Shown here: positions 18,096-63,918 of the stretch, piece by piece | Position numbering within the stretch: position 1 is the stretch's first letter | Layout of the letters: the number at the start of each line of letters is the position of its first letter | IMG/VR virus record: IMGVR_UViG_3300032268_000986 | Coordinates: 278,866-342,865 of that record | Direction: 5' to 3' (one strand) | DNA length: 64,000 nucleotides | Notes under the pieces: model-generated | Seen by the model: the letters and a program-made list of their open reading frames with translations, nothing else | Databases searched by the model: none | What the model was told of the DNA's origin: nothing | Position numbers and translations under genes: made by a program

Positions 18096-19150
18096 TATTC
18101 TTCCTCAACGTCAACAACAGGTGTGGCATCCTTTTGATTGCCAAAATCTTTCATCACAGTGTCAAGACAGCCGTCAGTATTGGCTTCCCATGCCTTGCGA
18201 AACTTCTTGATGATCTCGCCATCGCTTGTGGTAAACACTAGACTGTTGCCTTCGCGTTTGAGCAGGCCTTTTTTCTCAATCAAGTCCACAAGACCTGAGT
18301 AAGGGCTCATGCCTGTTTCATAAGGAATCTTGACTTGCACTCCCTCGAACGGCTTGGCATAGCGTGTTTTCATTACTTTACAGCCAGCACGAATACCAGT
18401 TACATCTGAAATCTTGTTGCCGTCTTCGTCCTCTTTGAGTTTCATCTTCTTCATGGCCACCACAATTGAGCTGGCGTAAATGAAACCTTGACCACCTGAA
18501 ATCTTGTCGTCTGGATCAAACATGTCTTGACTGGCGTATGTGTGATTGGTACAAACCAGGCCCACGTTGTAACTACCAAACATGTTGACACAGTTACGCA
18601 CCAAGGCGGTAAGAGCTTTGGGCTTGCGACCTAGGTCACCTTTCATTTCGCCTGCATCAAATTGATTCACATCAGTGGGTGTCAGCAACATGCCCAGGCT
18701 GTCAATTACAAACATGACCTTGGGTCGCTCGGCAGGATCAAGAGCTTTGTAGTCGCTCATGAATGTAGAGATAGTTTTAGCTACATCGTCAATCATGGCC
18801 ATTGACAATTTGAGTAACTTGCTGTCACTGGTATCAACTCCCAGGGCCTTGAGCCAGTCTTCGTCCAAGGCATTTTCGCTGTCAATCAACACTACAAAGA
18901 TGCCTTGCTGTTGTGCATGTTTGATAATGTTGCCACTACAGATGTAACTTTTACCTGCGCCCGAGTCACCGGCAAACACCGTGACCTTGCCCAAGGGGAT
19001 ACCTCGATCAAAGTCTCCTGAGATCAAGTAGTTCAAAGCATAGTTGCCTGTGGAGATCCAGTCTGTGGGATCATTGAATCCAATCGACAATCCGTCGATA
19101 CTTTTTGTAATTTCCTTGCGGAATTTTGATACGTCAAATGGTTTAGCCAT
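18095..19150 (-). CDS. uvsX: RecA-like recombinase UvsX
   Basis: ISTG, GDSGAGKS, LIDSENA, VIDSLG, TNHTY, SGG.G..YASS, KTR. Confidence 0.92.
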   Translation of the reverse strand: MAKPFDVSKFRKEITKSIDGLSIGFNDPTDWISTGNYALNYLISGDFDRGIPLGKVTVFAGDSGAGKSYICSGNIIKHAQQQGIFVVLIDSENALDEDWLKALGVDTSDSKLLKLSMAMIDDVAKTISTFMSDYKALDPAERPKVMFVIDSLGMLLTPTDVNQFDAGEMKGDLGRKPKALTALVRNCVNMFGSYNVGLVCTNHTYASQDMFDPDDKISGGQGFIYASSIVVAMKKMKLKEDEDGNKISDVTGIRAGCKVMKTRYAKPFEGVQVKIPYETGMSPYSGLVDLIEKKGLLKREGNSLVFTTSDGEIIKKFRKAWEANTDGCLDTVMKDFGNQKDATPVVDVEEE

Positions 19151-20741
19151 GGTATTTTCCTTTGTAAATGATATCTGCTATTTCTGGATGTGTCTGATTA
19201 AATTTTTGATCTCTTATATTGTCTAATTTTAGCATGAATTTTGATAGTTCGTCAATTAAATCTGGTGAATATTTGTTCTGTTTGAGTAAGGCAATGATAG
19301 GAAATACATTGTGTTTTATTAACTTGTCATGATCAATTTGAGATAATTTGTCAATGACTTGAGTTGTTAATTCCGTATTCATTGCTGTTATGCTTAAAAA
19401 TTTTGGGTGTTCTAATAAATTAAAATTTAATTTGTTAAATTTTTTTGTATCTACCCAGGTTATTAACTGATCAAGATAATAAACATTTTGAACATTAACT
19501 GTGGTAAAAATACTAAGGATCATGTTTGGTAGTTTGTTTTCTAAGAATTTATCTAAGTTAACATTGACCAAATCCCATTTCCCCCCGCGCTCTAATTCAA
19601 ACCGTGTACCTATGTTATCTATGCTAAATGCAATGTCAACTTGTCGGAACAACTTCCATTTTTCAAACAAATGTGCTGGGTACACAGACCCGTTTGAATT
19701 GTAATGTAGTCTAATTTTGTGTGCCAGGTCATGCTCTATTAGATAATCTAAAAATGTCTCTTGTTGCTTGATGAGAAACGGCTCGCCACCATAAAAATCA
19801 ATGTTAACCAGCTGATTTCCCAACGTGTTAAACATTTTCCAAATTTGATCATTTTTGACCCACTGTCCTTTTCGATTGAGATTTTTGAGATCAATAATAG
19901 AGTCAAAGTGTCGTGCCTGTTCTTCTGCTATTTTTGAACTAGCGTCTGAATTGCATATTCTGCATGCAAAATTACAAAGATTTCCTAGTTTTAAATCTAG
20001 ACTAACTAAATTTTCAAGTTGATCTTGCTCTATGTCTAAACATTGCGCATCAATCCCAAGACAATCACTGAACCACTGTCGATTTGATTGCCCTTTATGT
20101 TGTTCTTTCATCCAGCAGCTCGAACATCCGGCAGGACGATCCCCGTCGAGAAATTGTGTTCTTAACCTTGTTAAATAGTCACTGTGGTAGACTTCTTCAA
20201 TACTATTAGTATTGATATTGTAGGGAACATTGTTGGAATCCGTTATTGATTCTTTATACACACAACAAGGTCTAAATTCGCCTTGTGACGAAATTTCTAA
20301 ATGTGCCCATGGACTAAAACAAAATGTGTCAGGCAAGGTAATTGCAGGATTCTTAACAACCTCAGGTGCGACGTCACTAAATTTTATGTCCAGTGTTGAA
20401 AAAATACAATCATCTGTTGAATAGTTGCGTCTAACTAATTCAAGATGATCTTGATCAATGTCAGAACCAGAACTACAAATTAAAATAAAAAAGTTAGATA
20501 TATCTAACAGCGTTGCGCTTTTTTGTATGTGTATTAAAGTTTCAACTGATATCAAATTTCTACTGTACAGAACTATTCGACTATGATCACTGTATTCTGG
20601 TTGGTACCATTGTTTAAATAATTTATACAGTGTTTTTCGAGGTTGACCAAGTAATTGATCTAGGTCGATTACACCAACTATTTGATAGTTGTAATGTTGT
20701 TCTAAATACTGTTTTAGGTCAGTTGAGGGTATCGGTGTCAT
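19143..20741 (-). CDS. Radical SAM/SPASM protein with N-terminal extension (AT-rich insertion)
   Basis: FCFSPW...PCC...GCSSC, CNFACRIC, FYGGEP; AT-rich codon usage unlike its flanks. Confidence 0.88.
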   Translation of the reverse strand: MTPIPSTDLKQYLEQHYNYQIVGVIDLDQLLGQPRKTLYKLFKQWYQPEYSDHSRIVLYSRNLISVETLIHIQKSATLLDISNFFILICSSGSDIDQDHLELVRRNYSTDDCIFSTLDIKFSDVAPEVVKNPAITLPDTFCFSPWAHLEISSQGEFRPCCVYKESITDSNNVPYNINTNSIEEVYHSDYLTRLRTQFLDGDRPAGCSSCWMKEQHKGQSNRQWFSDCLGIDAQCLDIEQDQLENLVSLDLKLGNLCNFACRICNSDASSKIAEEQARHFDSIIDLKNLNRKGQWVKNDQIWKMFNTLGNQLVNIDFYGGEPFLIKQQETFLDYLIEHDLAHKIRLHYNSNGSVYPAHLFEKWKLFRQVDIAFSIDNIGTRFELERGGKWDLVNVNLDKFLENKLPNMILSIFTTVNVQNVYYLDQLITWVDTKKFNKLNFNLLEHPKFLSITAMNTELTTQVIDKLSQIDHDKLIKHNVFPIIALLKQNKYSPDLIDELSKFMLKLDNIRDQKFNQTHPEIADIIYKGKYHG

Positions 20742-25303: not shown

Positions 25304-25863
25304 GTGATATTGGGCTTTAATAATGTGTACGAGGTCAGTCTAAATGTGCCCACAGGCACAGGGTTGAGCATGCCATGAAACAAGCCAGTGGTTTCAGCAT
25401 TGTTTAAAGGGTTGGTCATTATGTATCCTGTGTTGGCCTGAGATTCAAACTGTTTTCTCACTTGCTGGCCTTGACTGTCATGATAAAAACAGGTGCCCTG
25501 TTCAGAATGGCCTATCCAATACATCTGCATGGCGCCCGGCAACGCACCGTCGGTATGTATAGGGCAATCAAACCCTTCATGATCCAACCAAAACACAGTA
25601 TGTCCATGATGATGACTGAGTAAAGGCATGTTGATCATGGTGCTGATACGAAACCATATCTGTTGTTGATTGGTTGTCCATTGGTCTCCCCAGGACAGAT
25701 CATGAAGTTCAATTCTGCGTCGAGGCCAGGTTTCTTGGCAAGGTTGAGTACTGTGTGGGACATTCAACCAGTCCGTGGCAAGTATTTGTTGCAAAAGATC
25801 TGAGGGCACCAGGTCAGTTACCTGGAACAGATTTGGAACACTGTCAACTGCGGTTATTTGCAT
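25300..25863 (-). CDS. 2OG-Fe(II) oxygenase-like protein
   Basis: Start probably ATG 25863. HTD (HxD), G..T.FY, N.GY, distal HG and R.TSY. Confidence 0.7.
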   Translation of the reverse strand: MQITAVDSVPNLFQVTDLVPSDLLQQILATDWLNVPHSTQPCQETWPRRRIELHDLSWGDQWTTNQQQIWFRISTMINMPLLSHHHGHTVFWLDHEGFDCPIHTDGALPGAMQMYWIGHSEQGTCFYHDSQGQQVRKQFESQANTGYIMTNPLNNAETTGLFHGMLNPVPVGTFRLTSYTLLKPNIT

Positions 25864-26996
25864 AGGTGTGATAACTCTGGCCATAGCTTTTCAAACTCAC
25901 CTGCTTTGTCAGGATGGAACACAGTTTCGTTGTCCACTATGTGTTGTTTGAATTGTTTTTCAATTCCAGGTCGGGCCTGTTTTATGTCACGATACATATT
26001 TAATGAGTTATCAAAAAATGCACGTTCAGCCGGAGTGGAGATCCCTAGATTGTAAAAACGTTCTATCTCAGAAATTGCTGCGGCTGCAACTTCTGGACCA
26101 TGCAGAAATGGATCAAGATACTCTGGTTGAAACAGGTTCTGCCACAACACTGTGGTACCAGTTTGCTCGGCAAATTCGCGCAGTTCACAAATGCGTGTGG
26201 CATTGTAGATGTTGTACACTGCATGTATGCCACCCCACTGTCCTTGCGTTTTCATCAAGTCCTTGATCAGTTGCAAGTTGTGTTGAATTGTGCTCCAGGT
26301 GGCACCATGTCGCACATATTCAAGGCGATCACCGGTGTTATCAAAGCTCATGCTCCAGCCCACTTTGTTTCTAGTTGATAACTTTTGAAATATCTTGTTT
26401 GATTCTAGATCAACATTCAAGTTTGTAATCAGTGTGACAATTGCGTCCTTGGGTATGACATCCAACAAACGATTGTTTTCTGGCAACAACAAGGGCTCGC
26501 CGCCTACCAGCGCAACTTCATGTATGTGTTCGTAGTGCTGTTCAATGAAGTCACACACTGAATCGTAGTAGGGTCTTGCACCACTCTTGAATGGAATACC
26601 TTTGATGCCGGCCCATTTTGAGCTGCATGATTCACCGCAGTAGTTACAACTCAGGTTACAAGTGGTATTCCAACGCACATCCACAATCACAGGATAGTGA
26701 TATTTGTCTCCTGCTGTGGCATAATCAAAGTTGGGATTTACATTGTTGTGCCAGGCCCGTTCAGAATCAGCACCAAATCGTTCTGCTCGCACACAATTGC
26801 TGCAATACTCATGTGGGATTCCTTGTGCAAGACTATTGCGTATCTTGCCCATGAGATCAGAGTTTAAAATCTCAACAATGCTCTGTGAGTTCAAGTTGCC
26901 CAGCATGTTGGGATTGCCGGCACAGCAGGTTTTTACATCGCCCCTGGGATTGATATGTAGGCCGCGCCAGGGAGCGGCACAATAGAAATTTGTCAT
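25854..26996 (-). CDS. Radical SAM protein with twitch/SPASM domain
   Basis: YCAAPW...TCC...CSNC, CNLSCNYC, LVGGEP, ITN. Confidence 0.9.
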   Translation of the reverse strand: MTNFYCAAPWRGLHINPRGDVKTCCAGNPNMLGNLNSQSIVEILNSDLMGKIRNSLAQGIPHEYCSNCVRAERFGADSERAWHNNVNPNFDYATAGDKYHYPVIVDVRWNTTCNLSCNYCGESCSSKWAGIKGIPFKSGARPYYDSVCDFIEQHYEHIHEVALVGGEPLLLPENNRLLDVIPKDAIVTLITNLNVDLESNKIFQKLSTRNKVGWSMSFDNTGDRLEYVRHGATWSTIQHNLQLIKDLMKTQGQWGGIHAVYNIYNATRICELREFAEQTGTTVLWQNLFQPEYLDPFLHGPEVAAAAISEIERFYNLGISTPAERAFFDNSLNMYRDIKQARPGIEKQFKQHIVDNETVFHPDKAGEFEKLWPELSHLCK

Positions 26997-27014: not shown

Positions 27015-27452
27015 TTAGTTGCACCAAGATGTTTTGGCTTCGCCGTAGTATTCGCGGGCAAACCCGTTGGCAATCAGTTGCTGACGTAGGCTAACACCGT
27101 TTAACAGCACATCTCCCAGCACACGGCCACCATACTTGTCCCAGTCCATGAGCACAATCTGTCGCTTTTGACTGGCAGCAATCAGTTGCTTGGTAAATGC
27201 TGTGGCAGCTTCACCACGTTGAGCTTCACTGGCACATTGAGCACGATGGCCCTTTTCAGGAGTGTCAACTCCGAACACACGGATACTGAGTTCCTGTTTG
27301 AGTGGTGCAGGCAACCATGTGGCTTGTATGCCCACTGTGTCACCGTCTATGACTCTGGTGATTACGGCGTCATATGTGACACCGGGTTTTTGTCGGGGTT
27401 GTGCTAATACTAACACAGGAACGACGAGTAAGAGTAGGATGAGTTTTTTCAT
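27015..27452 (-). CDS. Thermonuclease (SNase-like) with N-terminal signal-like hydrophobic segment
   Basis: VIDGDT, IRVFGVDTPE, DKYGGRVLG, LIANGFAR; leaderless late promoter TTAAATA at 27457-27463. Confidence 0.88.
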   Translation of the reverse strand: MKKLILLLLVVPVLVLAQPRQKPGVTYDAVITRVIDGDTVGIQATWLPAPLKQELSIRVFGVDTPEKGHRAQCASEAQRGEAATAFTKQLIAASQKRQIVLMDWDKYGGRVLGDVLLNGVSLRQQLIANGFAREYYGEAKTSWCN

Positions 27453-27459: not shown

Positions 27460-28068
27460 TTAAGCTACTTGATATGTGCCAGAAAGATCAAAATGTGCGC
27501 CCGATTGCCAGGCGCCTGTGGCCGGAGTGTTGAATTTCCAAACTAGATCGGTAGTGCTACCAGAATAATACAGTTTCATAACTGTGGTGCTGTCAATGAC
27601 ATCTGTGATTCCGGCAATATGGTATAAGGCAGGAGAACCAGCACCGGCTGTTTGATGCAGGCTGCCTCCGGCCAGTCTAAATGTGTTTAGTGCGGGGGTG
27701 GGCAGTGTAATCTGATATCCTGTGCTGCCAAAGTTGGTAACTCCTGTAAAATCCACATACACATGTATATACATCAGCGGACCCATACGCACATAAGATG
27801 CTGTAGCAGTGCCGCCGGCAAATGTGCCCGATCCGTCAGTGAACTGTGGGTTGAATGTTGTGGTGCTGGTAACGCCAGATCCGTATGCTACTAAATTTAA
27901 ATTTCCGTTGACGTTGCCCACATAGATATCTTGTGTGAGTTGGTTGACTACTAATTCACTTGGGCGAGCAACACCATTGTAATCGCCAATGGTTTCTTGT
28001 GCATTGTCTTTCATCACAGCACGGCTTATGCCTGTGATGTTGTCGTATGGTGGGGGTGGATTGGCCAT
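27460..28068 (-). CDS. Probable virion structural protein
   Basis: Late promoters at 28093-28107; Gly/Thr-rich beta-sandwich-like C-terminus (YVRMGPLMYIHVYVDF) typical of fibre-tip domains. Confidence 0.6.
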   Translation of the reverse strand: MANPPPPYDNITGISRAVMKDNAQETIGDYNGVARPSELVVNQLTQDIYVGNVNGNLNLVAYGSGVTSTTTFNPQFTDGSGTFAGGTATASYVRMGPLMYIHVYVDFTGVTNFGSTGYQITLPTPALNTFRLAGGSLHQTAGAGSPALYHIAGITDVIDSTTVMKLYYSGSTTDLVWKFNTPATGAWQSGAHFDLSGTYQVA

Positions 28069-28108: not shown

Positions 28109-28489
28109 TTAATAGCCATTAAAGGGTCGGACTGGACTCTGTGTGTCCACAAACGTGGGTTCTGTGCTGTCAGGGGTTGATACTAGTTGTTTGCCGTCCG
28201 GAGTGTTGGTCATGGTCAGTGCAGTATCAATTATTTGTGCGATTCCTGCGTTCATGCCAGCAATGACCCCGTGTTCGCCAAATGCAGTTTCACCGCTCCA
28301 TGCTGGCAGGTTGTCGGTTAATCCATCTGTGCCTGCATCACTTCTGGCTCGTGCCATGGCCACACTGAATCTATAGTTGTTGTAGGGATCAGCAGCACTG
28401 AGCCCGGGAATCACATAGGTATGACGCATGGGATTGGCCTGCTCAGGTGGCAGGGATTTATGCTCGGTTACAAATTCACGGGCTCGCAT
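28109..28489 (-). CDS. Candidate internal head protein, paralog B
   Basis: N-terminus MRAREFVTE; ends QSPVRPFNGY; paralogous to 28489-28854. Confidence 0.6.
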   Translation of the reverse strand: MRAREFVTEHKSLPPEQANPMRHTYVIPGLSAADPYNNYRFSVAMARARSDAGTDGLTDNLPAWSGETAFGEHGVIAGMNAGIAQIIDTALTMTNTPDGKQLVSTPDSTEPTFVDTQSPVRPFNGY

Positions 28490-28854
28490 CAGTAACCCCC
28501 AAACGCCTTGACTGGACTTTGTTTGCCAGTGCTTGCTAGTTCTTCTGAATCCATGTCACCTGAATTCAAATCAGTATACTCAGCACCAGCTGCCTTGAAT
28601 GCTTGTTTCAGCATTTCGTGTTCAATTTCTGTGTAAGGATAGGCACCACGTTTTTTTCCTATCCAACTTTTTTCATCCATGTCCAACACATCGCCTGATC
28701 CGTCGGCCATGGCCACTGCCATCATCACACGATTGAGAGTGTAGTCACTGTTGGTGCGTTCGCCATCGCTAAACGTGGTCAAGCCCACCGTGGCGGCTTG
28801 ACGACGGTTGCCTATAGTACCATCGCGCTCAGTGATAAACTCTCGTGCTCGCAT
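28489..28854 (-). CDS. Candidate internal head protein, paralog A
   Basis: N-terminus MRAREFITE; ends QSPVKAFGGY. Confidence 0.6.
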   Translation of the reverse strand: MRAREFITERDGTIGNRRQAATVGLTTFSDGERTNSDYTLNRVMMAVAMADGSGDVLDMDEKSWIGKKRGAYPYTEIEHEMLKQAFKAAGAEYTDLNSGDMDSEELASTGKQSPVKAFGGY

Positions 28855-29135
28855 TACGGTGTGTACACGCTGGACAGTGCCGAACTTGCTGTGCCCAGTT
28901 CAGTTGCTGTCCAATTTGAACCAGTCACAGTGACTTTGTTGCCAGCACCTGAGTATATTTCAACTGTGCTGTTGGCAGGTACTTGCACAGCAACAGTGTA
29001 TAAATTTCCCACGGCAGCAGCCGATCCCAAGGCAACTGCATACACATTGTAAGTCACTGCGGTGTTGCCTGTGGCAATACTGAGCTTGTCAGTGTAAACT
29101 GTGGCATTGGACAGTGTGGTGTATACGTTGGCCAT
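28854..29135 (-). CDS. Small beta-rich hypothetical (probably virion) protein
   Basis: 93 aa, Ala/Thr/Val rich, coupled in the late operon. Confidence 0.7.
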   Translation of the reverse strand: MANVYTTLSNATVYTDKLSIATGNTAVTYNVYAVALGSAAAVGNLYTVAVQVPANSTVEIYSGAGNKVTVTGSNWTATELGTASSALSSVYTP

Positions 29136-29320
29136 TATTTCTTGTCCTGTGGAGGAGTTTGTGGAGGGATAGCAACCACTGGTTGAAACAAGTTACGAGT
29201 CTGATCCAACACACCAGGAATGTTTACAGGCTGTTGCTTGTAACCCTGTGTTGCAGGGCTGTGTGGATTCAACACTGGTAGTGTTGTCAGTACTGATTCT
29301 TTAATAATTTTTTGTGTCAT
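29135..29320 (-). CDS. Small hypothetical protein
   Basis: Start revised to ATG 29320 (MTQKIIKES), with a GGAG SD, 2 nt from the upstream stop. Confidence 0.65.
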   Translation of the reverse strand: MTQKIIKESVLTTLPVLNPHSPATQGYKQQPVNIPGVLDQTRNLFQPVVAIPPQTPPQDKK

Positions 29321-29321
29321 A

Positions 29322-31424
29322 TCAAACTCCGTGTTTGCCTTTGTACTCTTTCCAAAGACCAGCCACGCTCTCACGTACTTTTTCCATGTCGCCGTCGCCG
29401 TCTAGGTCAGCTTCTTTCTTGCCATCGGCACGGGCCTTGGCCAGATTGCCAGTGAACTTGTTGCCTTCTTCGGTCTTTTCTTCGTCAACTTCTTTTTTCT
29501 TGACGCCGGCCATTTCCATCATGCGCTTGATGGCATCTTCTTCTTCGGCAGCATAGCTTTGCTGACGTTCTTCTTGACTGGCCAGCACAGGTACTGTGCT
29601 CTGACCAGTTGACTTGGGACCGTTCAAGCCACCTGAGTATTCAAAGTTGTTGTCAGCCTGTTCAGTCTTGGTGGGATAGTCAGGAGAATTTTCATCCACC
29701 ATGTCTGAACAACCACATGGGGCTTGATTGCAAGTTGGACAGGCTTCTTCACCGTGATCATGACCATGATCTTGTCCGCCACCAATACCGGCCATTTTGA
29801 GGATTTCTGCCAACTTGGCTGCATCTTCTTCAGTGGCTGTGACTGTTAGAGAACTGCCACCTTCGGTTGAGCTGCTCATGTTGATGCTCATGCTTTCAGC
29901 AATCATGCTTTCTAGTTCACGATTCATTGAATCATAGATGCCCTTGCCAAAACTCATGCTGCCCTTGCCACCAGCAGCTGGAGCCACGCTGCCTGCTGTG
30001 GTGCTGGATTCGTCAACTTCTTTTTCTTTCTTCTTGCCTTCGGATTTTTTCTTTTCAGGCAAGCCCTTGTGCTTGGTGCTGGCAAAATCTTCAGCATCTT
30101 TTTTCTTCATGGTCTTGGCAACTTTGGCAACTTCTTTGCTGGGGGCTTTTTCGCCCTTTTGTGTTGCATGTACCATGCCCATGAACTTCTGCTGCTTCTT
30201 GCTTACTGCTTTTTCATCAAGCTCTTGTTCACCGTCTTTGCTGATTTTGTAGCCGGCTTTTTTCAGCAACTTCATAGCTGCTTTAACGTCGTCACCTTCT
30301 TCTTTGAGATTGTATTCTGGTCCAGAAGCAGTACCGCCCACACGTTGTGCCATTGGTCGCATACCAGCTCTATTAATCATCTGAGTTTGCTTGAGTCTTT
30401 GTGGATTTTTTTGTGCAAAGGCTAGCAGTTGACGAGCTGTGTTTTCATCGTAAGTTTCGACACTACCTGCGTCAGGATCAACTTCGGCGCCATTCATAGC
30501 AGCAATCTGATCAATCAATGTGTCATCTAAGATAGCAAAAGTTTGTTTCATTCCGCCGCTTTCTTTAGTCATTAACTTTGATCGGCCGCTTGGTCCCTTG
30601 GCACCGGTGCGATTGCTTGTGCCTTTGGGTCGGCCACGACTGCGTTTTTCTCCGGCTGCTGGAGTTTCATCACCTGTGTTGGTTTCACCAGTCTTGGCAT
30701 CGTAGGCACGTGTGTGACGAATACCAGTTGCTGTTTTTTCAATTTCGCCCTTGCTGGTCTTGACACGATCGCCCACACGCATGCCGCTGTGGTCGCCGGC
30801 ACGGCGCTTGACGTCGGCCATCATGTCGTCCCAACCTTCGTCCATTTCTGAGTTACGACCTCGGCCGCCGCCCAGGGCTGACTTCATGGCTTCTGCAGCC
30901 ACATCGCCCAGCATCTCGTCAACTTCTTTCTTGGCGCCGGCAATTTTGTCGGCAAAAGTGATCTTGTCTTTTGGTTCGGCTAGTGCAGCAAAGCTCTTGG
31001 CCTTGGCCGGTGACATTTTTTCTTTGACTACCTTGGGATTTGGTTCACGGCCAGGCTTCATGCCAGTTTGTGGTACGCCCATTCTTTTCTGCAGGTCACG
31101 CATCATGTCTGCATCGCTGCCATGTCCCAGTGTGTCCAGGGCCTTGGAGCCCAGCTTTTTGGCAGCACCACCCACTTTCTTGACAATGTTGCCCAGGCCT
31201 TCGTCAACTTCGGTGTTGTCATATTTGTCATATTTGGCACGTACTGGGTCAAGGTCTTTGCCTTCACGTCCGGCCTTGGCCAAGGCTTCCATGCCTTCTT
31301 TGCCGTATTTTTCATAGCCCTTGGCAGCACGGCTCATGTCACGCTCATTGAGCTGACCATGTGTTTTGCTTGGTGTGGCGCGGATCTCGTCCAGCTTTTT
31401 GTTTAAGTCGTAAAAAAATGTCAT
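29322..31424 (-). CDS. Large charged modular protein (candidate protease-processed head-core/internal protein) with AT-hook motif
   Basis: 700 aa, Lys/Glu/Gly-rich, many hydrophobic-x-E sites (LNE, VDE, VKE, MDE, LDE, IAE, VRE); AT-hook KRSRGRPKG. Confidence 0.55.
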   Translation of the reverse strand: MTFFYDLNKKLDEIRATPSKTHGQLNERDMSRAAKGYEKYGKEGMEALAKAGREGKDLDPVRAKYDKYDNTEVDEGLGNIVKKVGGAAKKLGSKALDTLGHGSDADMMRDLQKRMGVPQTGMKPGREPNPKVVKEKMSPAKAKSFAALAEPKDKITFADKIAGAKKEVDEMLGDVAAEAMKSALGGGRGRNSEMDEGWDDMMADVKRRAGDHSGMRVGDRVKTSKGEIEKTATGIRHTRAYDAKTGETNTGDETPAAGEKRSRGRPKGTSNRTGAKGPSGRSKLMTKESGGMKQTFAILDDTLIDQIAAMNGAEVDPDAGSVETYDENTARQLLAFAQKNPQRLKQTQMINRAGMRPMAQRVGGTASGPEYNLKEEGDDVKAAMKLLKKAGYKISKDGEQELDEKAVSKKQQKFMGMVHATQKGEKAPSKEVAKVAKTMKKKDAEDFASTKHKGLPEKKKSEGKKKEKEVDESSTTAGSVAPAAGGKGSMSFGKGIYDSMNRELESMIAESMSINMSSSTEGGSSLTVTATEEDAAKLAEILKMAGIGGGQDHGHDHGEEACPTCNQAPCGCSDMVDENSPDYPTKTEQADNNFEYSGGLNGPKSTGQSTVPVLASQEERQQSYAAEEEDAIKRMMEMAGVKKKEVDEEKTEEGNKFTGNLAKARADGKKEADLDGDGDMEKVRESVAGLWKEYKGKHGV

Positions 31425-31429
31425 TTGAT

Positions 31430-32038
31430 TTATCCTCTTGGGTGTGCGCCTGTAGTAGGCTTTGGCGGACGCTTGACCTTGCTGAACGGGCTGTTGTTGC
31501 CCATTGGCAGATCATTTGTGGTTTTTGCCGGAGGTGTCTTGCCGCCAGCCACTGTGAAATCACTACGGTATGCATTTTTCAGCACAACATGATTGTATGG
31601 ATCAGCTGAGTAATCTTTCTTCAATGCACGTTGCTCGGCATCGTCGGCAGGATAATCAGTGTCTTTCAACAGATCTTTGTTTTGATCTGTGATCTTTTCA
31701 CTTTCTTGACGTAGACTTTCATCATGAGCACGAGTGCCCATGACAATACGATTTGGATCCATGCCTAGAATCTGTGCCAACTGTTTGATCTGTGGCTCGA
31801 TTGCAGGGTAACGGAAGTCTACGTCAATAATGGTAACAGGCTCGTTTTCAAAGGCCGGAAACTCTGGAATGCTTTTACGCACCGGAGTTGTCTTGGGGTC
31901 AGTCATCTTGGCGATGTCAAACTGAGCCAGTCGGGCTTTGAGCTGACGTACAAAGTCAGCTGGAGCGTCACCAACAATTTTAATGCGATATGTGTATACA
32001 CGTTCGCTTTCAGCAAGATATTGTGCAAATGGTCTCAT
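31430..32038 (-). CDS. Late hypothetical protein with CTS-like N-terminus
   Basis: MRPFAQYLAE resembles the T4 capsid-targeting sequence; late promoter at 32056-32062. Confidence 0.6.
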   Translation of the reverse strand: MRPFAQYLAESERVYTYRIKIVGDAPADFVRQLKARLAQFDIAKMTDPKTTPVRKSIPEFPAFENEPVTIIDVDFRYPAIEPQIKQLAQILGMDPNRIVMGTRAHDESLRQESEKITDQNKDLLKDTDYPADDAEQRALKKDYSADPYNHVVLKNAYRSDFTVAGGKTPPAKTTNDLPMGNNSPFSKVKRPPKPTTGAHPRG

Positions 32039-32058
32039 GGCGATTTCCTATTGAGTAT

Positions 32059-32547
32059 TTATTCTTTTTTGTCGTTTTGATCCACAGGAGGGCGCAAACG
32101 TGCCAGTAGATCATTACGACTAAGCACCACACTGGTGCCAGTTTGTGACACAGTTGCTTCAGGCGGTGTGGCTTGGTCTAGACGTGCTTTTTTCAGCTGC
32201 AAATCAATCATTTTGAGTTTTTTGTCTAGCTTGGCTGTTTTGGCTGTGATTGCATGTCCCAGCATGTTCGAAGCCACACTGAAGATATCACTGGCAAATC
32301 TTGAATCAACTTGCATGCCAAGATCCATGAGATCTCGATAGCTTTCGGTTGCCAGGCCAGCAAGTTCGTCCATTTCAGTGTCGGTTGCATCAAGGCCATT
32401 GACCGCAGGCAGTGCATTGTCAATTTTGTCAATGGCTTGATCAATGGCCTGAATCTGTTCACGCTGTTCTTCCACAGCAACAGGCAGATCTGTGTCAGGT
32501 GCAGCACCTGGGGGTAAATTAAACAGTTCTTCGAGTTTGCGAGTCAT
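32059..32547 (-). CDS. Putative terminase small subunit (gp16-like)
   Basis: 162-aa helical/coiled-coil protein of gp16-like size and pattern, next to gp4; leaderless late promoter at 32552-32558. Confidence 0.45.
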   Translation of the reverse strand: MTRKLEELFNLPPGAAPDTDLPVAVEEQREQIQAIDQAIDKIDNALPAVNGLDATDTEMDELAGLATESYRDLMDLGMQVDSRFASDIFSVASNMLGHAITAKTAKLDKKLKMIDLQLKKARLDQATPPEATVSQTGTSVVLSRNDLLARLRPPVDQNDKKE

Positions 32548-32562: not shown

Positions 32563-32994
32563 TTACTGACGGCCGTTGTGAAACATGTCGGTCTCGGTGA
32601 TGACTCTAAACATCATGCCGTTGCGGCGTGCCCACTTGGTGGCAGCATCCCATTTGGCATAGTTGATGGCTATCACAGCACGATCACGACTGCTCATCTT
32701 GCTCTCTATAACACTTTGTTTTTTGGGTTTGATTTCAATCAGCTCGGCTCGCACAGTGTTGTCTCTGGTGCGATATGTGATCAAAAAATCCGGGATGTAG
32801 TTGGCTGTTTTGCCTGTGAGTGGGTGGCGATAGGGTATGGCTATGCTTTCACTGGCCCACTGCAAGATATGATCATTGGTGTCACAAAATCGCATGAAGC
32901 TGTGTTCCCAGCCTGATCGATAGTGAGGTGCGCCGCGGCCCACATACTTGGCTGGATTGACAACTTGGTAGTCGCCTTGTGCCCACTTGGCCAT
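32563..32994 (-). CDS. gp4: Head completion nuclease (T4 gp4-like, TnsA-N fold)
   Basis: YRSGWE..FM.FCD....ILQWASE.I.IPY..P.....YIPDF...LIEIKP. Confidence 0.9.
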   Translation of the reverse strand: MAKWAQGDYQVVNPAKYVGRGAPHYRSGWEHSFMRFCDTNDHILQWASESIAIPYRHPLTGKTANYIPDFLITYRTRDNTVRAELIEIKPKKQSVIESKMSSRDRAVIAINYAKWDAATKWARRNGMMFRVITETDMFHNGRQ

Positions 32995-45486: not shown

Positions 45487-45896
45487 AAGCAGTTGGTGTT
45501 TGGTTTTATGCGGCCAGCACTGGTCGATATCTATACCTGTTGCGCAATGATCACAAACATCCTGGCGCCTGGGGCCTACCTGGGGGCAAACTTGAATCTG
45601 GTGAAACCTTGCTGGGTGGCATGGAACGTGAATGCACTGAAGAACTAGGCAGCTTTCCAGTGTATCAGCGACTGGTGCCTGTGGAGAAATTCACTGCTGG
45701 GGATTTTGAGTATCACACCTGGGTGTGTGTGGTCACTGGTGAATTTGTGCCTGTGCTAAATCACGAACACCTGGGGTATGCCTGGATCAATTCTAGTGTG
45801 TTTCCCAGGCCTATGCATCCGGGTCTTTGGAGCACAGTGAATCTCGAAGCTGTGCAAAGCAAGCTGCTCTTGATAGAGCAGGCATTGCAATTATAA
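45483..45896 (+). CDS. Nudix hydrolase
   Basis: Start revised to GTG 45483. Nudix box GLPGGKLESGETLLGGMERECTEELG; EH..YAW. Confidence 0.9.
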   Translation: MKAVGVWFYAASTGRYLYLLRNDHKHPGAWGLPGGKLESGETLLGGMERECTEELGSFPVYQRLVPVEKFTAGDFEYHTWVCVVTGEFVPVLNHEHLGYAWINSSVFPRPMHPGLWSTVNLEAVQSKLLLIEQALQL

Positions 45897-48800
45897 TCTA
45901 CCAACCACTATCTCAATAACACCCGATTCGCCGTTGAAGTTTTCCAGTGCTTTGCCAATAACTGTGCCCATGGCCGGTGTAGCACAGGCACATGCCGCAC
46001 CGTTACCAGCAGCGATCATCATGTCACCTTTGCGCACTGTGCCTGTGACCTTGGTAGGTACTCTTCCTGCTAGGGCCAGAGACACTGTGTACTCACTCTC
46101 TAGCATGGTGTTCATTAAATGAGCTGGATTAGTTGAAACCACACCGGCTACTCTAGCATCACCATACTGAGTTGACACAGTGACTTCGGCACTGCCACCA
46201 AACGACAGCACTGTGCCCGGAGTATACTCGGCATCTGCTGTGTACTTCTCTGCCAAGTCAGCATAACGAGCAGTTGTTGCAGTTGCAGTAATTATGTTAG
46301 CTGTGAAGTTTCCGCTTGCATCACGTGCAACAATTGCACTGGCTGTGTTGGCCGATGTTGCGGTAGAACCCAGGGTGACAGCACCAGTTGATACACTGGC
46401 TGTGATACCACCACCATTGGCCAGGCTCAGTACGCCTGTGTTGGTGATTGTAACGCCTGTGCTGCCGTTGTAGCTGGTGCCACCCAAACCTGTACCAATT
46501 GTCAATGTACCAGTTGCTGTAGCAGTGATAGTACCTGATCCACCCAGAGCAATTGCTGTGCCATTAACAGTCAAGCTGGCATTGGCCAATCTGGCTTGTG
46601 CTAATGTGCCACTTGAGATATTTGATGCATTGATTGTAGTGACATTGGCACCTGACCCGTTGAGTGTACCAAAGATGTTGCCACCAGTGATGTTGCCTGT
46701 GGCTGATATTAGGCCGGCTGTTAAAATGTTACCACCAGTGACGTTGCCACTTAGTGATGCTGTAGTACCTGTGTGTGTGGTGGCATTGACGTTGGCGCCA
46801 CCCAAGATGTTGCCACCAGTAATGTTGCCTGTGGCAGATATTAGACCACCTGTCAACAAGTTACCGCCAGTGATGTTGCCTGTGGCCGAAATTGTAGTGC
46901 TTGACGACACTGCACCAACCAATGGACCATAGAACGCTGCGGCAGTGATGTTACCCGACGCACTCATGCGTCCAATGTTCACATTACCTGTACCATTGGG
47001 TGTGAGTACAATGTTGGCGTTGGCAGCCGATGTTTGAATATCCAACTGAGCTGAGTCAACAATAGCACCTGACAACAATAGGTTTCCACCAGTGATGTTG
47101 CCAGTGCTCACAGTCAAACTGGTGCCAGTTATGGCAGCACCTGTGATGCCGCCAGCAGCTGAAATCAAGCCACCTGTGAGCAGGTTACCTGAAGTGGTAT
47201 TGCCTGTCACTGTGAGGCTGGTCAATGTACCCAATGATGTGATATTGGGCTGTGCTGCCGAGCTTACTGTGGCAGCATAGCCAGTGGTATTAACACTCAG
47301 TGTGCCGGTTACATTGGCTGCAGGTATTGATGTCAGTCCAGCACCTGATCCATTGAACTGCGATCCTGTGACTTGACCAGCTGCTGATATCAATCCTGCT
47401 GTGGTAATGTTGCCGCTCACAACGTTGCCACCAGCTGATATCAAACCTGTTGTATTGACGTTGCCCCCAACCACGTTGCCAGTGGCTGATACAAATGAAC
47501 TGGCTACTACTCTGGCAGTGTTAACGTTGCCAGCTGCAATATTGCCAGTTGCTGATACTGTGCCAGCAGTGCTCAAATTGCCTGTGATGGTATTGCCAGT
47601 CACACTCAAACTGGTCAGTGTGCCCACAGTCTGAAGACTTGAATTTACCACAGTGGCATTCAGGATAGATCCACTCAGTGTGCCTGCAGGTGCAACCACT
47701 GCCGCAGTAGATGCTGCTGTGAGCTGTCCTTGTTGGTTAACTGTAAACGTCGGGATAGCTGTGGAGTTGCCGTAGCTGCCGGCTGTGACCACTGTGTTGC
47801 TGATGCTGAACTGAGTGCCTGTCAGTGTGAGTCCAGTGCCAGCGGTGAAGGCACCCGAACCTGAGAATTGTGTCCAAACAACAGCACTTGTGCCCACTGT
47901 GGTAACTGGTTCCACCATGACCCAACCAGTGCTGTCATATTGTGTGCCTGCTGTGATAAACGTAAAGTCACCTCCAGCCATGGCAGTTGGAGTGTCAAAA
48001 TCTGTGGCACGAGTCAACACTGTTGTGCTTGTTCTTGTATAGATACCATTGTGTGCTGTGTTGGTTTCGTCTTTAATCAAGATACGCATGCCATTGCTCA
48101 GCGTCACACCGTCAATGGTGACATAACTGCCTGTGGTAGTCAGCGTGGCACCCACACCGCTGGTGCCATTGTTGTAGGTCACTGTGCCGCCAGAAATTGT
48201 GGCCAGTGTGGTCGTAGTTGCTGCGCTACATGAAGGTTGTATGTGCAATCCTTCAGCAACATTATCAACATAGGCCTTGGTGGCAGCATCTTGTGCTTGT
48301 ACAGGGTCACTGAGGTTGTTGATATATGTCTGAGTACTCAACACAATGTTGCCAGTGGCCGACAAATTGATGTTGCCGGTTGATCGTACTGTGGTTGCAG
48401 TACCAGTCACTGTGTTGGCAAAAACTCCACCCGCAGTGAGCAAGTTAGCGCCGGTGATGTTGCCTAACACACTCATGGCCTGTGATTCAGTGATAGTCAC
48501 TGCTATGGTAGGAGTGATAGCTCCGTTGGCAGTGGTTTGAATCACTGCATAGGTACCTCGAGCAGTGTCAGTTTGATCTTGTGCGGAGAAAAAGTCCAGT
48601 CTGCCAGTTGAGTTTGCACCAAATCCTTGTGATCCATTGCTGTAGCCACGGGCGGTGTACTGGGCTAATAGATCGCCGGCAACAGTTTGTGTTGGCGATG
48701 CTGCTGTACCACGAGCATGTCGTCCAGTGTAGGCAGTGTATACTCCTGTGCCATAGCTGTCTGTGGTAATTCGAGTAATATTAGCACTTTGGCCTGTGGC

Positions 48801-63541: not shown

Positions 63542-63665
63542 CTTGCTATAATGCACATGTATACAATATAATATACACTACTAGCAAGGTCGTTAAACTA
63601 TATTATTGACCCCAACTACTCCTGGCATGACCAGCTTGGATGTTGGGGTTTTCTCTTGTTCGTGA

Positions 63666-63687
63666 AAAAGCCCCTTGCGGGGCTTTT
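63666..63687. terminator. Bidirectional rho-independent terminator
   Basis: AAAAGCCCC-TTGC-GGGGCTTTT between convergent genes, with T-tracts on both strands. Confidence 0.85.
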
Positions 63688-63690
63688 ATT

Positions 63691-63918
63691 TTACGCGGCG
63701 TCTACAAACTTTTTCAGTTCTTCGGCCTGGCTGATGATATCCGTGGTTGACGGGAAATCAGGCATGGTTGGAAACGGAAGGCTTGCACGATTAGCATCAG
63801 TCAGTTTGGAATGATATTCGTCGCTGAGTTTGCTGCGTTTTTCGTAAATTGGCGCTTGAAGAATTTCTTTGGCCAAGGTAAGAAGTTCGAGACGGATCTC
63901 GTAAGGTGTTTTGCTCAT
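63691..63918 (-). CDS. Small hypothetical phage protein
   Basis: 75 aa MSKTPYEIRLELL..AKE; AGGAG SD; structured CA-rich leader. Confidence 0.8.
   Translation of the reverse strand: MSKTPYEIRLELLTLAKEILQAPIYEKRSKLSDEYHSKLTDANRASLPFPTMPDFPSTTDIISQAEELKKFVDAA

What the first reader, a model, noticed from the sequence alone, without database searches (positions are those of the whole stretch)
28109..32038. Cluster of candidate capsid-internal proteins with CTS-like N-termini and protease-site-delimited modules
Seen: N-termini MRAREFVTE, MRAREFITE and MRPFAQYLAE, and a 700-aa charged protein punctuated by hydrophobic-x-E sites and carrying an AT-hook (KRSRGRPKG). Established: T4 internal proteins carry a ~10-aa capsid-targeting sequence (MKTYQEFIAE-like) removed by gp21 after hydrophobic-x-E, and some are injected anti-defence factors. 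Inference: this phage packages several internal proteins, one acting as a polyprotein cut into small peptides that may bind DNA or be ejected into the host.
Basis: partly seen in the sequence, partly recalled or inferred. Interest (0 to 1): 0.6.

Follow-up and report, generated by a model that had tools for sequence, protein, structure and literature searches.

The report
Phage head internal-protein gene cluster
A giant T4-related phage carries a tightly coupled operon of probable head-packaged proteins: some have short N-terminal tags that nearly match T4's capsid-targeting sequence, and one is a 700-residue modular protein punctuated by a repeated EVDE motif that looks like a prohead-protease cutting site. 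The reading is well supported by comparison with other phages but unproven without virion proteomics.

Summary
The ORFs and N-termini are real. All lie on the minus strand as one translationally coupled operon: p202, p700, p61, p93, p121 and p126.

**Tags.** The 9-residue tag M-R-A-x-E-F-[IVL]-x-E is invariant in orthologs. It is kept at protein level, not DNA level. It heads at least 16-27 unrelated protein families in uncultured phages, and tag-bearing contigs encode a T4 gp21-type (Peptidase_S77) protease. p202's tag has the T4 CTS determinants: aromatic at 4 and 7, Leu8, Glu10.

**Virion evidence.** p202 is homologous to Pseudomonas phage PA5oct virion protein gp282. p700 sits where PA5oct virion protein gp281 sits.

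**Cleavage motif.** Generic hydrophobic-x-E is not enriched in p700. [LIVM]-D-E is: 8 observed against 0.8 expected, and EVDE is the top 4-mer. Two of these sites exactly bracket a DUF3008-like module that is a free-standing virion protein in cyanophages.

**Gap.** This record itself lacks the protease, because its two ends flank the missing head-gene module.

**Verdict.** A T4-style capsid-targeting and processing system in a distant jumbo clade: a new variant of a known kind. Cleavage, packaging and ejection remain inferred.

The parts
32059..32547 (-). p162, 162 aa, acidic coiled-coil-like protein. Context gene just upstream of the cluster.
   Evidence: 38% identical to PA5oct gp283 (E 2e-27) and matches PHROG 16202. 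gp283 has no MS tag in the PA5oct record. It lies between the gp4-like head-closure gene (32563-32994) and p202. The small-terminase-like position is my inference only.
32056..32062 (-). ATAAATA, a T4 late-promoter-like heptamer 18-24 nt upstream of the p202 start codon. Likely start of the operon transcript.
   Evidence: The motif is under-represented genome-wide (25 on this strand against about 31 expected), yet it sits directly upstream of p162 (32558), p202 (32062) and p202b (28107). Promoter function is inferred.
31430..32038 (-). p202, 202 aa, pI 8.9. Conserved virion-protein homolog with a 10-residue T4-CTS-like N-terminus (32009-32038), a ferredoxin-like core and a disordered Pro/Lys-rich tail.
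   Evidence: Homologous to PA5oct gp282, annotated 'structural protein, ESI-MS/MS' (hhalign 96%, E 1.7e-9). M1, Y7, L8 and E10 are invariant and F4 nearly so in 32 orthologs. 433 IMG/VR relatives. AF2 mean pLDDT 64.
29322..31424 (-). p700, 700 aa. Modular charged protein, candidate head-internal polyprotein.
   Evidence: Same position as PA5oct virion protein gp281, with no sequence similarity. Orthologs range from 614 to 894 aa with module gain and loss. [LIVM]DE is enriched.
31344..31424 (-). p700 residues 1-27, a candidate N-terminal propeptide ending in L-N-E27.
   Evidence: The LNE27 site is present in 100% of 32 orthologs. The N-terminus MTFFYDLNKKL is strongly conserved. Cleavage is inferred.
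30621..30647 (-). AT-hook-like KRSRGRPKG, p700 residues 260-268.
   Evidence: RGRP is present in 28 of 32 orthologs, mostly as KRGRGRPKG. DNA binding is inferred from the known HMGA-type motif.
30009..30212 (-). DUF3008-like basic module, p700 residues 405-472, pI 9.9. Bracketed by ELDE404 and EVDE472.
   Evidence: PHROG 30268 E 2e-24; Pfam DUF3008 17 bits, below its cut-off. It is a free-standing 69-91 aa gene in 156 cyanophage records, and S-SCSM1 gp279 is annotated 'virion protein'. It is present in 18 of 32 orthologs.
29481..31394 (-). Span holding the eight [LIVM]-D-E sites of p700. The motif residues are 11-13, 73-75, 168-170, 194-196, 402-404, 470-472, 576-578 and 646-648.
   Evidence: Coordinates. 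Enrichment. The flanks of the eight sites are unrelated, so this is a short linear motif, not a long repeat. Homology-block boundaries among orthologs fall within 3 residues of a site 72 times, against 39 +/- 6 at random.
29502..29810 (-). Two copies of a scaffold-C-terminus-like motif: ...ILKMAGI at residues 539-547 and ...MMEMAGV at residues 633-641.
   Evidence: The scaffold proteins of PA5oct (gp330) and of relative G001 end in ...LRRLAGIK and ...LKRLAGL. PA5oct gp281 carries three copies. These are among the best-conserved blocks of p700. Their role is inferred.
29135..29320 (-). p61, 61 aa, Pro-rich, pI 9.7, N-terminus MTQKIIKE.
   Evidence: Conserved in 44 loci. Many orthologs keep an [IL]-x-E at residues 6-8, and others start without that extension. 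It starts 1 nt after the p700 stop.
28854..29135 (-). p93, 93 aa, beta-rich, untagged, function unknown.
   Evidence: Conserved in 44 loci. TAATG stop-start overlaps on both sides. No family match.
28489..28854 (-). p121, 121 aa, pI 4.9. Tag MRAREFITE at 28828-28854.
   Evidence: Paralog of p126 (E 1e-6). M1, R2, F6 and E9 are invariant across 52 family members. No PHROG, NCBIfam or cultured-phage match, and only a sub-threshold Pfam HTH_47 hit (16.5 bits, cut-off 27.1).
28109..28489 (-). p126, 126 aa, pI 5.0. Tag MRAREFVTE at 28463-28489.
   Evidence: In the AF2 model residues 1-11 have pLDDT below 50 and lie outside the small alpha/beta core. TGATG overlap with p121.

Best explanation
**What it is.** The interval is a late, translationally coupled operon (p202, p700, p61, p93, p121, p126). 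It lies between the gp4-like head-closure gene plus p162 and the large terminase gene. The phage is an uncultured ~350-kb member of the T4 superfamily, related to Pseudomonas phage PA5oct.

**Proposed mechanism.**
1. The short N-termini are capsid-targeting sequences that take the proteins into the scaffolding core of the prohead. They are M-R-A-x-E-F-[IVL]-x-E on p121 and p126, and M-[KR]-x-F-x-x-Y-L-x-E on p202.
2. A gp21-type (Peptidase_S77) prohead protease then cuts after the invariant Glu. The mature proteins stay inside the head with the DNA.
3. p700 is a modular cargo of the same system. It enters the prohead, perhaps helped by its scaffold-C-terminus-like ...[KM]AG[IV] motifs. It is cut after L-N-E27 and at the repeated E-[VLM]-D-E sites into pieces of about 26-208 residues.
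4. These pieces include an AT-hook-bearing basic fragment and a basic DUF3008-like peptide that could bind the packaged DNA.

**Shown here.**
- Gene structure and coupling.
- Tag conservation at peptide level but not DNA level.
- The tag on many unrelated cargos.
- Co-occurrence of the tag with S77.
- Homology or synteny with PA5oct virion proteins.
- Motif enrichment.
- The coincidence of two sites with the module boundaries.

**Inferred.** Targeting, cleavage, retention in the head, DNA binding, and any ejection or anti-defence role.
For: **Lineage and synteny**
- The large terminase is 52% identical to that of PA5oct.
- The gene order Ad2, sheath, tube, tube, gp4-like, p162/gp283, p202/gp282, p700/gp281, TerL is shared. 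gp282 and gp281 carry ESI-MS/MS virion evidence in the PA5oct record.

**Tag behaviour**
- BLAST-collected orthologs of p121 and p126 all keep M-R-A-x-[ED]-F-[IVL]-x-E, with a free P2 position.
- The three copies in this genome differ at synonymous sites.
- The same tag heads a 210-aa protein with an unrelated body elsewhere in the genome.
- A pattern scan of IMG/VR gave 73 complete ORFs starting with the tag. Of these, 65 have no upstream in-frame ATG, and their bodies form at least 16 unrelated clusters.

**Match to T4**
- The T4 CTS is MKTYQEFIAE (PMC8442874).
- In T4, targeting depends on residues 4 and 7, and processing on residues 8 and 10 (PMC9026906).
- p202 has F4, Y7, L8 and E10.
- A related cargo inserted after p700 in loci L007 and L045 starts MKSFQEYLAE, which is 6 of 10 identical to the T4 CTS.

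**Protease**
- Relatives G001, G003 and G005 encode a protease 55-57% identical to PA5oct gp331. The G001 copy, the one scanned, scores 79 bits on Pfam Peptidase_S77. The gp23-type capsid protein and gp20-type portal lie next to it.
- Four of five large tag-bearing contigs encode S77 above the Pfam cut-off.

**p700**
- [LIVM]DE occurs 8 times against 0.81 expected, the top value in the genome. EVDE is the top 4-mer. The 32 orthologs hold 154 sites against 27.5 expected, with consensus [KE][KE]-E-V-D-E.
- The DUF3008-like module is bounded by ELDE404 and EVDE472. It equals a whole gene in cyanophages. In S-PM2 it is preceded by ...VLHE.
- Homology-block boundaries cluster at the sites.
- The head-module protein g418 of G001 has RLDE at residues 10-13 and KVDE near its C-terminus.

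**Other**
- The p126 tag is predicted to be disordered and outside the fold.
Against: - There is no proteomic or biochemical evidence for this phage or any close relative.
- The record contains no protease, capsid or portal gene. Their presence is inferred from relatives and from the position of the contig ends.
- The tag region of p202 aligns from residue 1 with PA5oct gp282, which has Ala instead of Glu at position 10. At least there it cannot be cut at that site, and the segment may simply be part of the protein.
- p121 and p126 share whole-length homology, so their identical N-termini alone could be common descent.
- p121 and p126 are acidic (pI about 5), whereas the T4 internal proteins are basic.
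- Generic h-x-E is not enriched in p700.
- Asp at P2 is not documented by me as accepted by an S77 protease.
- p700 and PA5oct gp281 share position but no detectable sequence similarity.
- The block-boundary test uses non-independent sequences, and a conserved motif tends to anchor alignment ends.
Confidence: 0.6

Rival explanations
1. p700 is an assembly-only core or scaffold-like protein. It enters the prohead and is chopped at the E-[VLM]-D-E sites so that the pieces can leave the shell before DNA packaging, as with T4 gp22. It delivers nothing to the host and does not stay with the DNA.
For: It carries motifs like the C-terminal ...RLAG[IL] of the clade's scaffold proteins. Its composition is charged and largely low in complexity. 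Many closely spaced candidate sites are what the literature describes for propeptides that must be cleared (PMC5694885).
Against: The positional counterpart PA5oct gp281 is detected in purified virions. The clade already has a separate gp22-like scaffold plus gp67- and gp68-like proteins. p700 has no similarity to them. The conserved AT-hook and the DUF3008 module, a virion protein in cyanophage S-SCSM1, suggest that some fragments are retained.
Confidence: 0.2
2. EVDE is not a protease site. It is a short interaction, metal-binding or linker motif, and p700 stays intact as one long DNA-associated virion protein.
For: Cleavage has not been observed. Generic h-x-E is not enriched. Acidic motifs recur in disordered proteins for other reasons.
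Against: The motif ends in Glu preceded at P3 by V, L, M or I, which fits the only known rule of S77 and related proteases. It brackets a module that is a stand-alone gene elsewhere. It persists in otherwise unrelated inserted segments of orthologs. The analogous repeated ...QGVAEG... punctuation occurs in other modular proteins of this phage group.
Confidence: 0.15
3. The shared N-termini are not capsid-targeting signals. They reflect common descent of paralogs, or another function of the first residues such as translation initiation, stability, or binding to a chaperone or another machine. The small proteins are not inside the head.
For: p121 and p126 are whole-length paralogs. Neither they nor any cultured-phage homolog has proteomic evidence. 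They are acidic.
Against: The tag is found on at least 16-27 unrelated cargo families and always at the ORF start. Its codons vary while the peptide is fixed. It fits the T4 CTS and cleavage rule. It co-occurs with S77. The genes are translationally coupled to homologs of proven virion proteins.
Confidence: 0.12
4. The cluster encodes external or neck/tail-associated virion parts rather than internal head proteins.
For: It lies next to tube, sheath and head-closure genes. The next gene downstream, p202b, looks like a fibre protein with a conserved N-terminus and a variable C-terminus. The PA5oct MS data show virion association only, not location.
Against: In T4 and its relatives, CTS-like tags and Glu-ending motifs are features of prohead substrates. 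p700 is disordered, charged and hypervariable in module content, unlike tail parts. No tail-family match was found.
Confidence: 0.08

Closest known systems
[quoted passage not shown]
   Same: A tag of about 9-10 residues ending in aliphatic-x-Glu, with aromatic residues at the T4 targeting positions. The same tag sits on unrelated cargos. The locus is variable, with cargo genes gained and lost. The clade has an S77 protease.
   Different: The main tag is one residue shorter (MRAxEF[IV]xE). p121 and p126 are acidic, not basic. The cargo repertoire is far larger, at 27 or more families. The host phage is a ~350-kb PA5oct-like jumbo phage, not a T-even. Nothing has been shown experimentally.
T4 prohead core proteins gp22, gp67 and gp68, and Alt, which is processed at both termini
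   Same: Charged proteins with several Glu-ending sites that are cut by the prohead protease. Small peptides result.
   Different: p700 is much larger and has no sequence similarity to them. It carries an AT-hook and a DUF3008-like module, and it uses a much more stereotyped site, E-[VLM]-D-E.
Ejection and inner-body proteins of phiKZ-like giant phages (phiKZ, 201phi2-1, SPN3US), cut at S/A/G-x-E or A-x-E
   Same: Many head proteins are processed after Glu. Paralogs share identical N-termini. Propeptides hold multiple sites (PMC5694885; PMC9026906).
   Different: A different phage lineage, and a protease only distantly related. In those phages P3 is small (A, S, G), whereas here it is aliphatic as in T4. 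Their propeptides are usually over 100 residues.
Pseudomonas phage PA5oct gp282 and gp281 (structural proteins by ESI-MS/MS)
   Same: gp282 is a homolog of p202. gp281 occupies the p700 position between gp282 and TerL and carries ...LAG[IVL] motifs.
   Different: Identity is 25% for p202. gp282 lacks Glu10. gp281 is strongly acidic, 499 aa long and not alignable to p700. PA5oct lacks p61, p93, p121 and p126 at this locus.
DUF3008 (PF11450) and PHROG 30268, small basic proteins of T4-like cyanophages (S-PM2 p146, S-SCSM1 gp279)
   Same: 65-76% identity over about 52-58 residues. S-SCSM1 gp279 is annotated as a virion protein.
   Different: Here it is an internal module of a 700-aa protein, flanked by EVDE-type motifs. 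The Pfam score of 17 bits is below the gathering cut-off of 24.
HMGA-type AT-hook
   Same: An R-G-R-P core with flanking Lys and Arg, conserved in 28 of 32 orthologs.
   Different: A single copy in a phage protein. Minor-groove binding has not been tested.

Membership tests
T4-type CTS-bearing head internal proteins | N-terminal tag of about 10 residues ending in aliphatic-x-Glu, with the T4 targeting determinants (aromatic at positions 4 and 7) | tested here: met
   p202 has F4, Y7, L8 and E10, invariant or nearly invariant in 32 orthologs. p121 and p126 have F6, [IV]7 and E9 in a 9-residue version. The T4 rule is taken from PMC9026906 and PMC8442874.
T4-type CTS-bearing head internal proteins | The same tag on otherwise unrelated cargo proteins | tested here: met
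   At least 16 unrelated clusters among 73 tagged ORFs from the IMG/VR scan. 27 clusters over all loci held. An unrelated 210-aa tagged cargo in this genome.
T4-type CTS-bearing head internal proteins | The genome encodes a gp21-type (Peptidase_S77) prohead protease | tested here: inconclusive
   Not found in this 342,865-bp record. It is present in relatives G001, G003 and G005, with G001 scoring 79 bits on Pfam S77, and in 4 of 5 other tag-bearing contigs. The two ends of this record flank exactly the head module of G001.
T4-type CTS-bearing head internal proteins | Physically inside the capsid, with the tag removed after Glu | not testable with these tools
   The only indirect evidence is that PA5oct gp282 and gp281 are MS-detected virion proteins. 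The paper's supplementary peptide tables are not held.
T4-type CTS-bearing head internal proteins | Small, highly basic mature protein | tested here: not met
   p121 has pI 4.9 and p126 pI 5.0. p202 has pI 8.9. Some predicted p700 fragments have pI 9.2-9.9.
Prohead-protease-processed polyprotein or core protein | Recurrent Glu-ending motif above chance, located at module boundaries | tested here: met
   [LIVM]DE occurs 8 times against 0.81 expected. EVDE is the top 4-mer. The 32 orthologs hold 154 against 27.5 expected. The motif brackets the DUF3008 module. Boundary enrichment is, with caveats.
Prohead-protease-processed polyprotein or core protein | Observed cleavage products | not testable with these tools
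   Needs virion mass spectrometry or an in-vitro protease assay.
Pfam DUF3008 (PF11450) | Score at or above the gathering threshold | tested here: not met
   17.1 bits against a cut-off of 24. The same segment matches PHROG 30268 at E 2e-24 and cyanophage genes at 65-76% identity.
gp22-like scaffolding protein | Sequence similarity to the clade's scaffold (PA5oct gp330, G001 362-aa protein) | tested here: not met
   No BLASTP hit at E < 0.05. Only the short ...[KR][LM]AG[ILV] motif is shared.
AT-hook DNA-binding motif | G-R-P core flanked by basic residues | tested here: met
   KRSRGRPKG at residues 260-268. RGRP is present in 28 of 32 orthologs. Binding itself was not tested.

The most novel reading that the evidence does not exclude
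This abundant, uncultured jumbo-phage clade may run a general 'tag-and-cut' cargo system.
- Interchangeable N-terminal capsid-targeting tags load dozens of unrelated proteins into the head.
- Long modular polyproteins (p700 here, and the 519-aa and 633-aa proteins elsewhere in the genome) are cut at stereotyped motifs (EVDE, QGVAEG). This releases separate effectors whose new N-termini become functional.
- Such new N-termini would include twin-arginine (Tat) signal peptides that are internal and silent in the precursor. Injected modules would then be re-exported by the host into its periplasm.
Probability: 0.12. Interest if true: 0.85.

Novelty: new variant of a known kind. Interest (0 to 1): 0.6.

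Why it matters
**What it would extend.** T4's capsid-targeting sequence is the classic route by which phages load proteins into the head for delivery with the DNA, and it is already used as an engineering tool. If this finding holds, three things follow.
- The same logic operates in a distant, environmentally abundant jumbo-phage clade. The p202 family has 433 IMG/VR relatives.
- The cargo repertoire is much larger than in T4.
- There is a polyprotein format with a stereotyped cutting motif.

**What it makes possible.**
- It gives a sequence rule that could find candidate head-delivered proteins, possibly including anti-defence factors, directly in metagenomes.
- It gives short, testable tags and sites for packaging foreign proteins in jumbo phages.

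**The limit.** No function of any cargo is known. The finding matters only once packaging and cleavage are shown.

Tried and rejected
**Searches of this record and of cultured phages**
- Pfam S77 and Gp23 searches of the record found nothing.
- tblastn with the PA5oct portal, protease, scaffold and capsid proteins found nothing. The contig ends flanking the head module explain this. It is not evidence that the phage lacks these genes.
- megablast of the region, and tblastn of p202 and p121, against 50,697 cultured-phage records gave no match.

**Family scans**
- PHROG, Pfam and NCBIfam scans of p126, p121, p93 and p202 gave nothing usable. A weak HTH_47 hit in p121 (16.5 bits, below cut-off) was ignored.

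**Structure-based searches**
- The PDB sequence search with the DUF3008-like module was empty.
- AF2 models of p202 (pLDDT 64) and p126 (pLDDT 62) are only moderate.
- Foldseek in PDB gave only a generic ferredoxin-like (S6/ACT/PII) fold for p202.
- In BFVD, p202 matched only uncharacterised phage proteins, including one from Atu_ph07. p126 matched nothing.
- The protein-atlas look-up of p126 scored below 0.9 and gave only unnamed clusters.

**Unavailable**
No verdict.
- The PA5oct supplementary MS tables are not held.

**Ideas dropped**
- Generic hydrophobic-x-E enrichment was tested and rejected.
- The CxxC...CxC cluster in p700 was considered as a zinc knuckle. It was dropped because the cysteines are not conserved.

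**Literature**
- A literature search for MRAREF and MRAQEF returned no paper.

**Not used**
- I did not use the reads tools, any alternative genetic code, the search for homologous proteins or the search of protein representatives. No claim here rests on absence of relatives.

Full report
**Where the window lies.** The window is the last 64 kb of a 342,865-bp linear IMG/VR virus record. Family scans show a T4-superfamily myovirus. They find UvsX, UvsY, a gp32-like SSB, the large terminase, a 1091-aa sheath, two tube-like proteins, a gp4-like head-closure protein and an Ad2 adaptor. The nearest annotated phage is Pseudomonas jumbo phage PA5oct, whose TerL is 52% identical. Sinorhizobium phage Phosso, Agrobacterium phage Atu_ph07 and Rak2/GAP32-like phages follow.

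**The observation.** All genes of the interval are on the minus strand.
- p202: 31430-32038, MRPFAQYLAE.
- p700: 29322-31424.
- p61: 29135-29320, MTQKIIKE.
- p93: 28854-29135. Also not listed.
- p121: 28489-28854, MRAREFITE.
- p126: 28109-28489, MRAREFVTE.

The gene junctions are a 5-nt gap, a 1-nt gap and three TAATG or TGATG overlaps, so the six genes are translationally coupled. An ATAAATA heptamer resembling the T4 late promoter sits just upstream of p162, p202 and the next gene p202b. The heptamer is under-represented genome-wide. KRSRGRPKG is at p700 residues 260-268.

**Is it more than chance?**
- A loose tag pattern hits 6 ORFs of the genome against 0.89 +/- 0.88 for shuffled N-termini. 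Three of the six are in this cluster.
- Generic hydrophobic-x-E in p700 is not clearly enriched: 17 against 10.9 +/- 3.0 for LIVM, and 22 against 19.0 for a broader set.
- A narrower motif is strongly enriched. [LIVM]-D-E occurs 8 times against 0.81 expected (P 2e-6), the best of 357 ORFs.
- An unbiased k-mer scan makes EVDE the most over-represented 4-mer, at 4 against 0.02 expected.
- In 32 non-redundant orthologs the motif occurs 154 times against 27.5 expected. The consensus is [KE][KE]-E-V-D-E followed by M, G, S, K or A.
- The flanks of the eight sites are unrelated to one another. This is therefore a short linear motif, not a long repeat.

**Synteny with a phage that has proteomics.** PA5oct has the same gene order:
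- head closure gp284;
- gp283, 38% identical to p162;
- gp282, 201 aa;
- gp281, 499 aa;
- TerL gp280.

The record marks gp282 and gp281 as structural proteins with ESI-MS/MS evidence. p202 is homologous to gp282 (BLASTP E 5e-9 pairwise; hhalign probability 96%, E 1.7e-9, aligned from residue 1). p700 and gp281 share only position and a short recurring motif. PA5oct lacks p61, p93, p121 and p126 at this site. In relatives of the present phage this stretch also gains and loses other genes, so it is a plastic locus.

**The tags.**
- IMG/VR holds 433 stretches encoding p202 relatives. Eighty loci were fetched.
- Orthologs collected by BLAST, not by the tag, keep M-R-A-x-[ED]-F-[IVL]-x-E in p121 and p126, with position 8 free.
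- They keep M-[KR]-x-F-x-x-Y-L-x-E in p202.
- The three MRAxEF copies in this genome use different codons, so selection acts on the peptide.
- p121 and p126 are paralogs along their whole length. On their own they would prove little.
- The same tag heads a 210-aa protein with an unrelated body at G000 179021-179653 and a 235-aa protein inserted between p121 and p126 in L065.
It gave 73 complete ORFs of 60 aa or more that begin with the tag. Of these, 65 have no upstream in-frame ATG. Their bodies fall into at least 16 unrelated clusters.
- Over all loci held there are 27 clusters for the 9-residue form.
- A second cargo family sits right after p700 in L007 and L045. It begins MKSFQEYLAE, which is 6 of 10 identical to the T4 CTS with four conservative changes.
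- The T4 CTS is MKTYQEFIAE (PMC8442874). Mutational work places targeting at residues 4 and 7 and processing at residues 8 and 10 (PMC9026906). p202 has F4, Y7, L8 and E10.
- In the AF2 model of p126, residues 1-11 are low-confidence and outside the small core.

**The protease.**
- The record has no match to Pfam S77 or Gp23. It also has no match to the PA5oct portal, protease, scaffold or capsid proteins.
- Relatives G001, G003 and G005 encode a protease 55-57% identical to PA5oct gp331.
- In G001 the protease scores 79 bits on Peptidase_S77. It lies in a T4-ordered head module: portal, gp67-like, gp68-like, protease, scaffold, gp23-type capsid protein.
- Mapping the G001 genes onto this genome shows that the gene just before that module is at window 62393-63538. 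The gene just after it is at G000 1120-2493.
- The two ends of the record therefore flank the missing head module. The absence is an assembly gap, not a biological loss.
- Four of five other large tag-bearing contigs also encode S77 above the Pfam cut-off.
- Capsid-protein N-termini in G001 and PA5oct carry conserved L-x-E sites just before the Gp23 domain. This fits T4-like specificity.

**p700 as a modular protein.**
- Orthologs range from 614 to 894 aa. Conserved blocks are separated by lineage-specific insertions.
- Conserved features:
  - the N-terminus with L-N-E27, present in 100% of orthologs;
  - the AT-hook, in 28 of 32;
  - a DUF3008-like basic module, in 18 of 32;
  - two blocks ending ...ILKMAGI and ...MMEMAGV.
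- The DUF3008-like module spans residues 405-472 (PHROG 30268, E 2e-24). It is bounded by ELDE404 and EVDE472.
- In 156 cyanophage records the same module is a separate small gene. In S-SCSM1 that gene is annotated as a virion protein and starts where the p700 module starts. In S-PM2 it is preceded by an extension ending ...VLHE.
- Homology-block boundaries among orthologs fall within 3 residues of an [LIVM]DE site 72 times against 39 +/- 6 at random. This test uses related sequences, and a conserved motif can anchor alignment ends, so it is supporting evidence only.
- Cutting at LNE27 and all [LIVM]DE sites would give fragments of 26-208 residues, three of them basic with pI 9.2-9.9.

**A scaffold-like motif.** The scaffold proteins of PA5oct and G001 end in ...LRRLAGIK and ...LKRLAGL. 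The same short motif recurs in four places:
- in p700;
- three times in PA5oct gp281, including its N-terminus;
- near the C-terminus of a 633-aa modular protein elsewhere in this genome;
- in that protein's family across IMG/VR.

I infer that it may be a second prohead-binding determinant. This is not tested.

**Mechanism, and how sure I am.**
- Head association of the cluster through CTS-like tags and S77 processing: about 0.6.
- p700 being cut at the EVDE-type sites: about 0.45.
- Any fragment binding DNA or entering the host: plausible but untested.

Points against:
- PA5oct gp282 lacks Glu10.
- p121 and p126 are acidic.
- p700 and gp281 are not alignable.
- There is no direct proteomic evidence.
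- I have not documented Asp at P2 for S77 enzymes.

**Comparison with what is known.**
- The system works like the T4 IP/CTS/gp21 system and like the processed ejection proteins of phiKZ-like phages.
- It meets the sequence-level criteria of the T4 type.
- It fails the 'small basic protein' criterion for p121 and p126.
- The in-genome protease criterion is left open by the assembly gap.
- The clade, the shorter tag, the breadth of cargos and the stereotyped E-[VLM]-D-E punctuation of a modular protein are not in the literature I could search.
- I class it as a new variant of a known kind.

**Limits.** The PA5oct supplementary peptide tables are not held. I did not use the reads tools, the large protein searches or any alternative genetic code.

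Noticed in passing
G000 162359-163918 (-) = L232:7359-8918; G000 179650-181551 (-) = L091:9650-11551; L218:1714-3156: Three long modular proteins carry an internal twin-arginine (Tat) signal above the NCBIfam TIGR01409 cut-off, at residues 201-229, 320-347 and 79-106. Each signal lies a few residues after a Glu-ending motif (ELDE or GVAE). The 519-aa protein starts with a cytidylyltransferase/NMNAT-like domain and is second in the genome for [LIVM]DE enrichment. Cleavage would make the Tat signal N-terminal.
   Followed up: partly
G000 179650-181551 (-) and loci L212-L230: A family of modular proteins (331-1110 aa) shares three things: N-termini of the form M-I-I-x-D-L-[FY]-x-E, a repeated ...QGVAEG... 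punctuation, and a conserved C-terminal block ...DYQDMVARVKKLAGLGPL.... The segments between these features differ from phage to phage. In this genome the gene is followed, with a 4-nt overlap, by the MRAQEFVTE-tagged 210-aa gene.
   Followed up: partly
window 62393-64000 and G000 1-2493: The two ends of the record flank the head-morphogenesis module. In relative G001 the module holds a 418-aa protein, the gp23-type capsid protein, scaffold, S77 protease, gp68-like, gp67-like and portal. About 8-9 kb seems to be missing from an otherwise near-complete genome (CheckV 99%).
   Followed up: yes
window 27460-28068 (-): p202b starts MANPPPPYDNITG. Its N-terminal part is conserved and its C-terminal part is variable. 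L016 has two tandem copies of 202 and 465 aa. This looks like a fibre or receptor-binding protein with an exchangeable tip. It has its own ATAAATA upstream.
   Followed up: no
window 27015-27452 (-); L054:14405-15220: A 145-aa nuclease (PHROG 452, 'endonuclease') with a clear Sec-type signal peptide (MKKLILLLLVVPVLVLAQP) sits between the cluster and TerL. In some relatives a signal-peptide-bearing Endonuclease_NS (PF01223, E 1e-41) is also found in this stretch.
   Followed up: no
window 25854-26996 (-) and 19143-20741 (-): Two radical-SAM-like proteins (PHROG 14086 and 1802) are embedded among the packaging and recombination genes. Relatives carry one or two copies next to TerL.
   Followed up: no
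L005:5425-6063; L033:8902-9492: Two extra ORFs of about 200 aa interrupt the cluster in some relatives. One lies between p202 and p700 and the other between the gp4-like gene and p162. By eye, from their first 22 residues, they look like homing endonucleases. No family scan was run.
   Followed up: no
L002 (S-SCSM1 88632-94787) and L001 (S-PM2 104620-110793): In T4-like cyanophages the free-standing DUF3008-like gene lies one or a few genes downstream of an NMNAT/cytidylyltransferase gene, separated by other ORFs. In S-SCSM1 the NMNAT, the intervening 520-aa protein and the DUF3008-like protein are all annotated as virion proteins. This echoes the NMNAT-like polyprotein of this genome.
   Followed up: no
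window 45891-52571 (-), 53335-55842 (-), 57827-60793 (-): Several very long ORFs (2226, 835 and 988 aa) share repeated segments with each other, with other loci in the genome and with the G001 1322-aa protein. They look like fibre-like paralogs with shuffled repeats.
   Followed up: no
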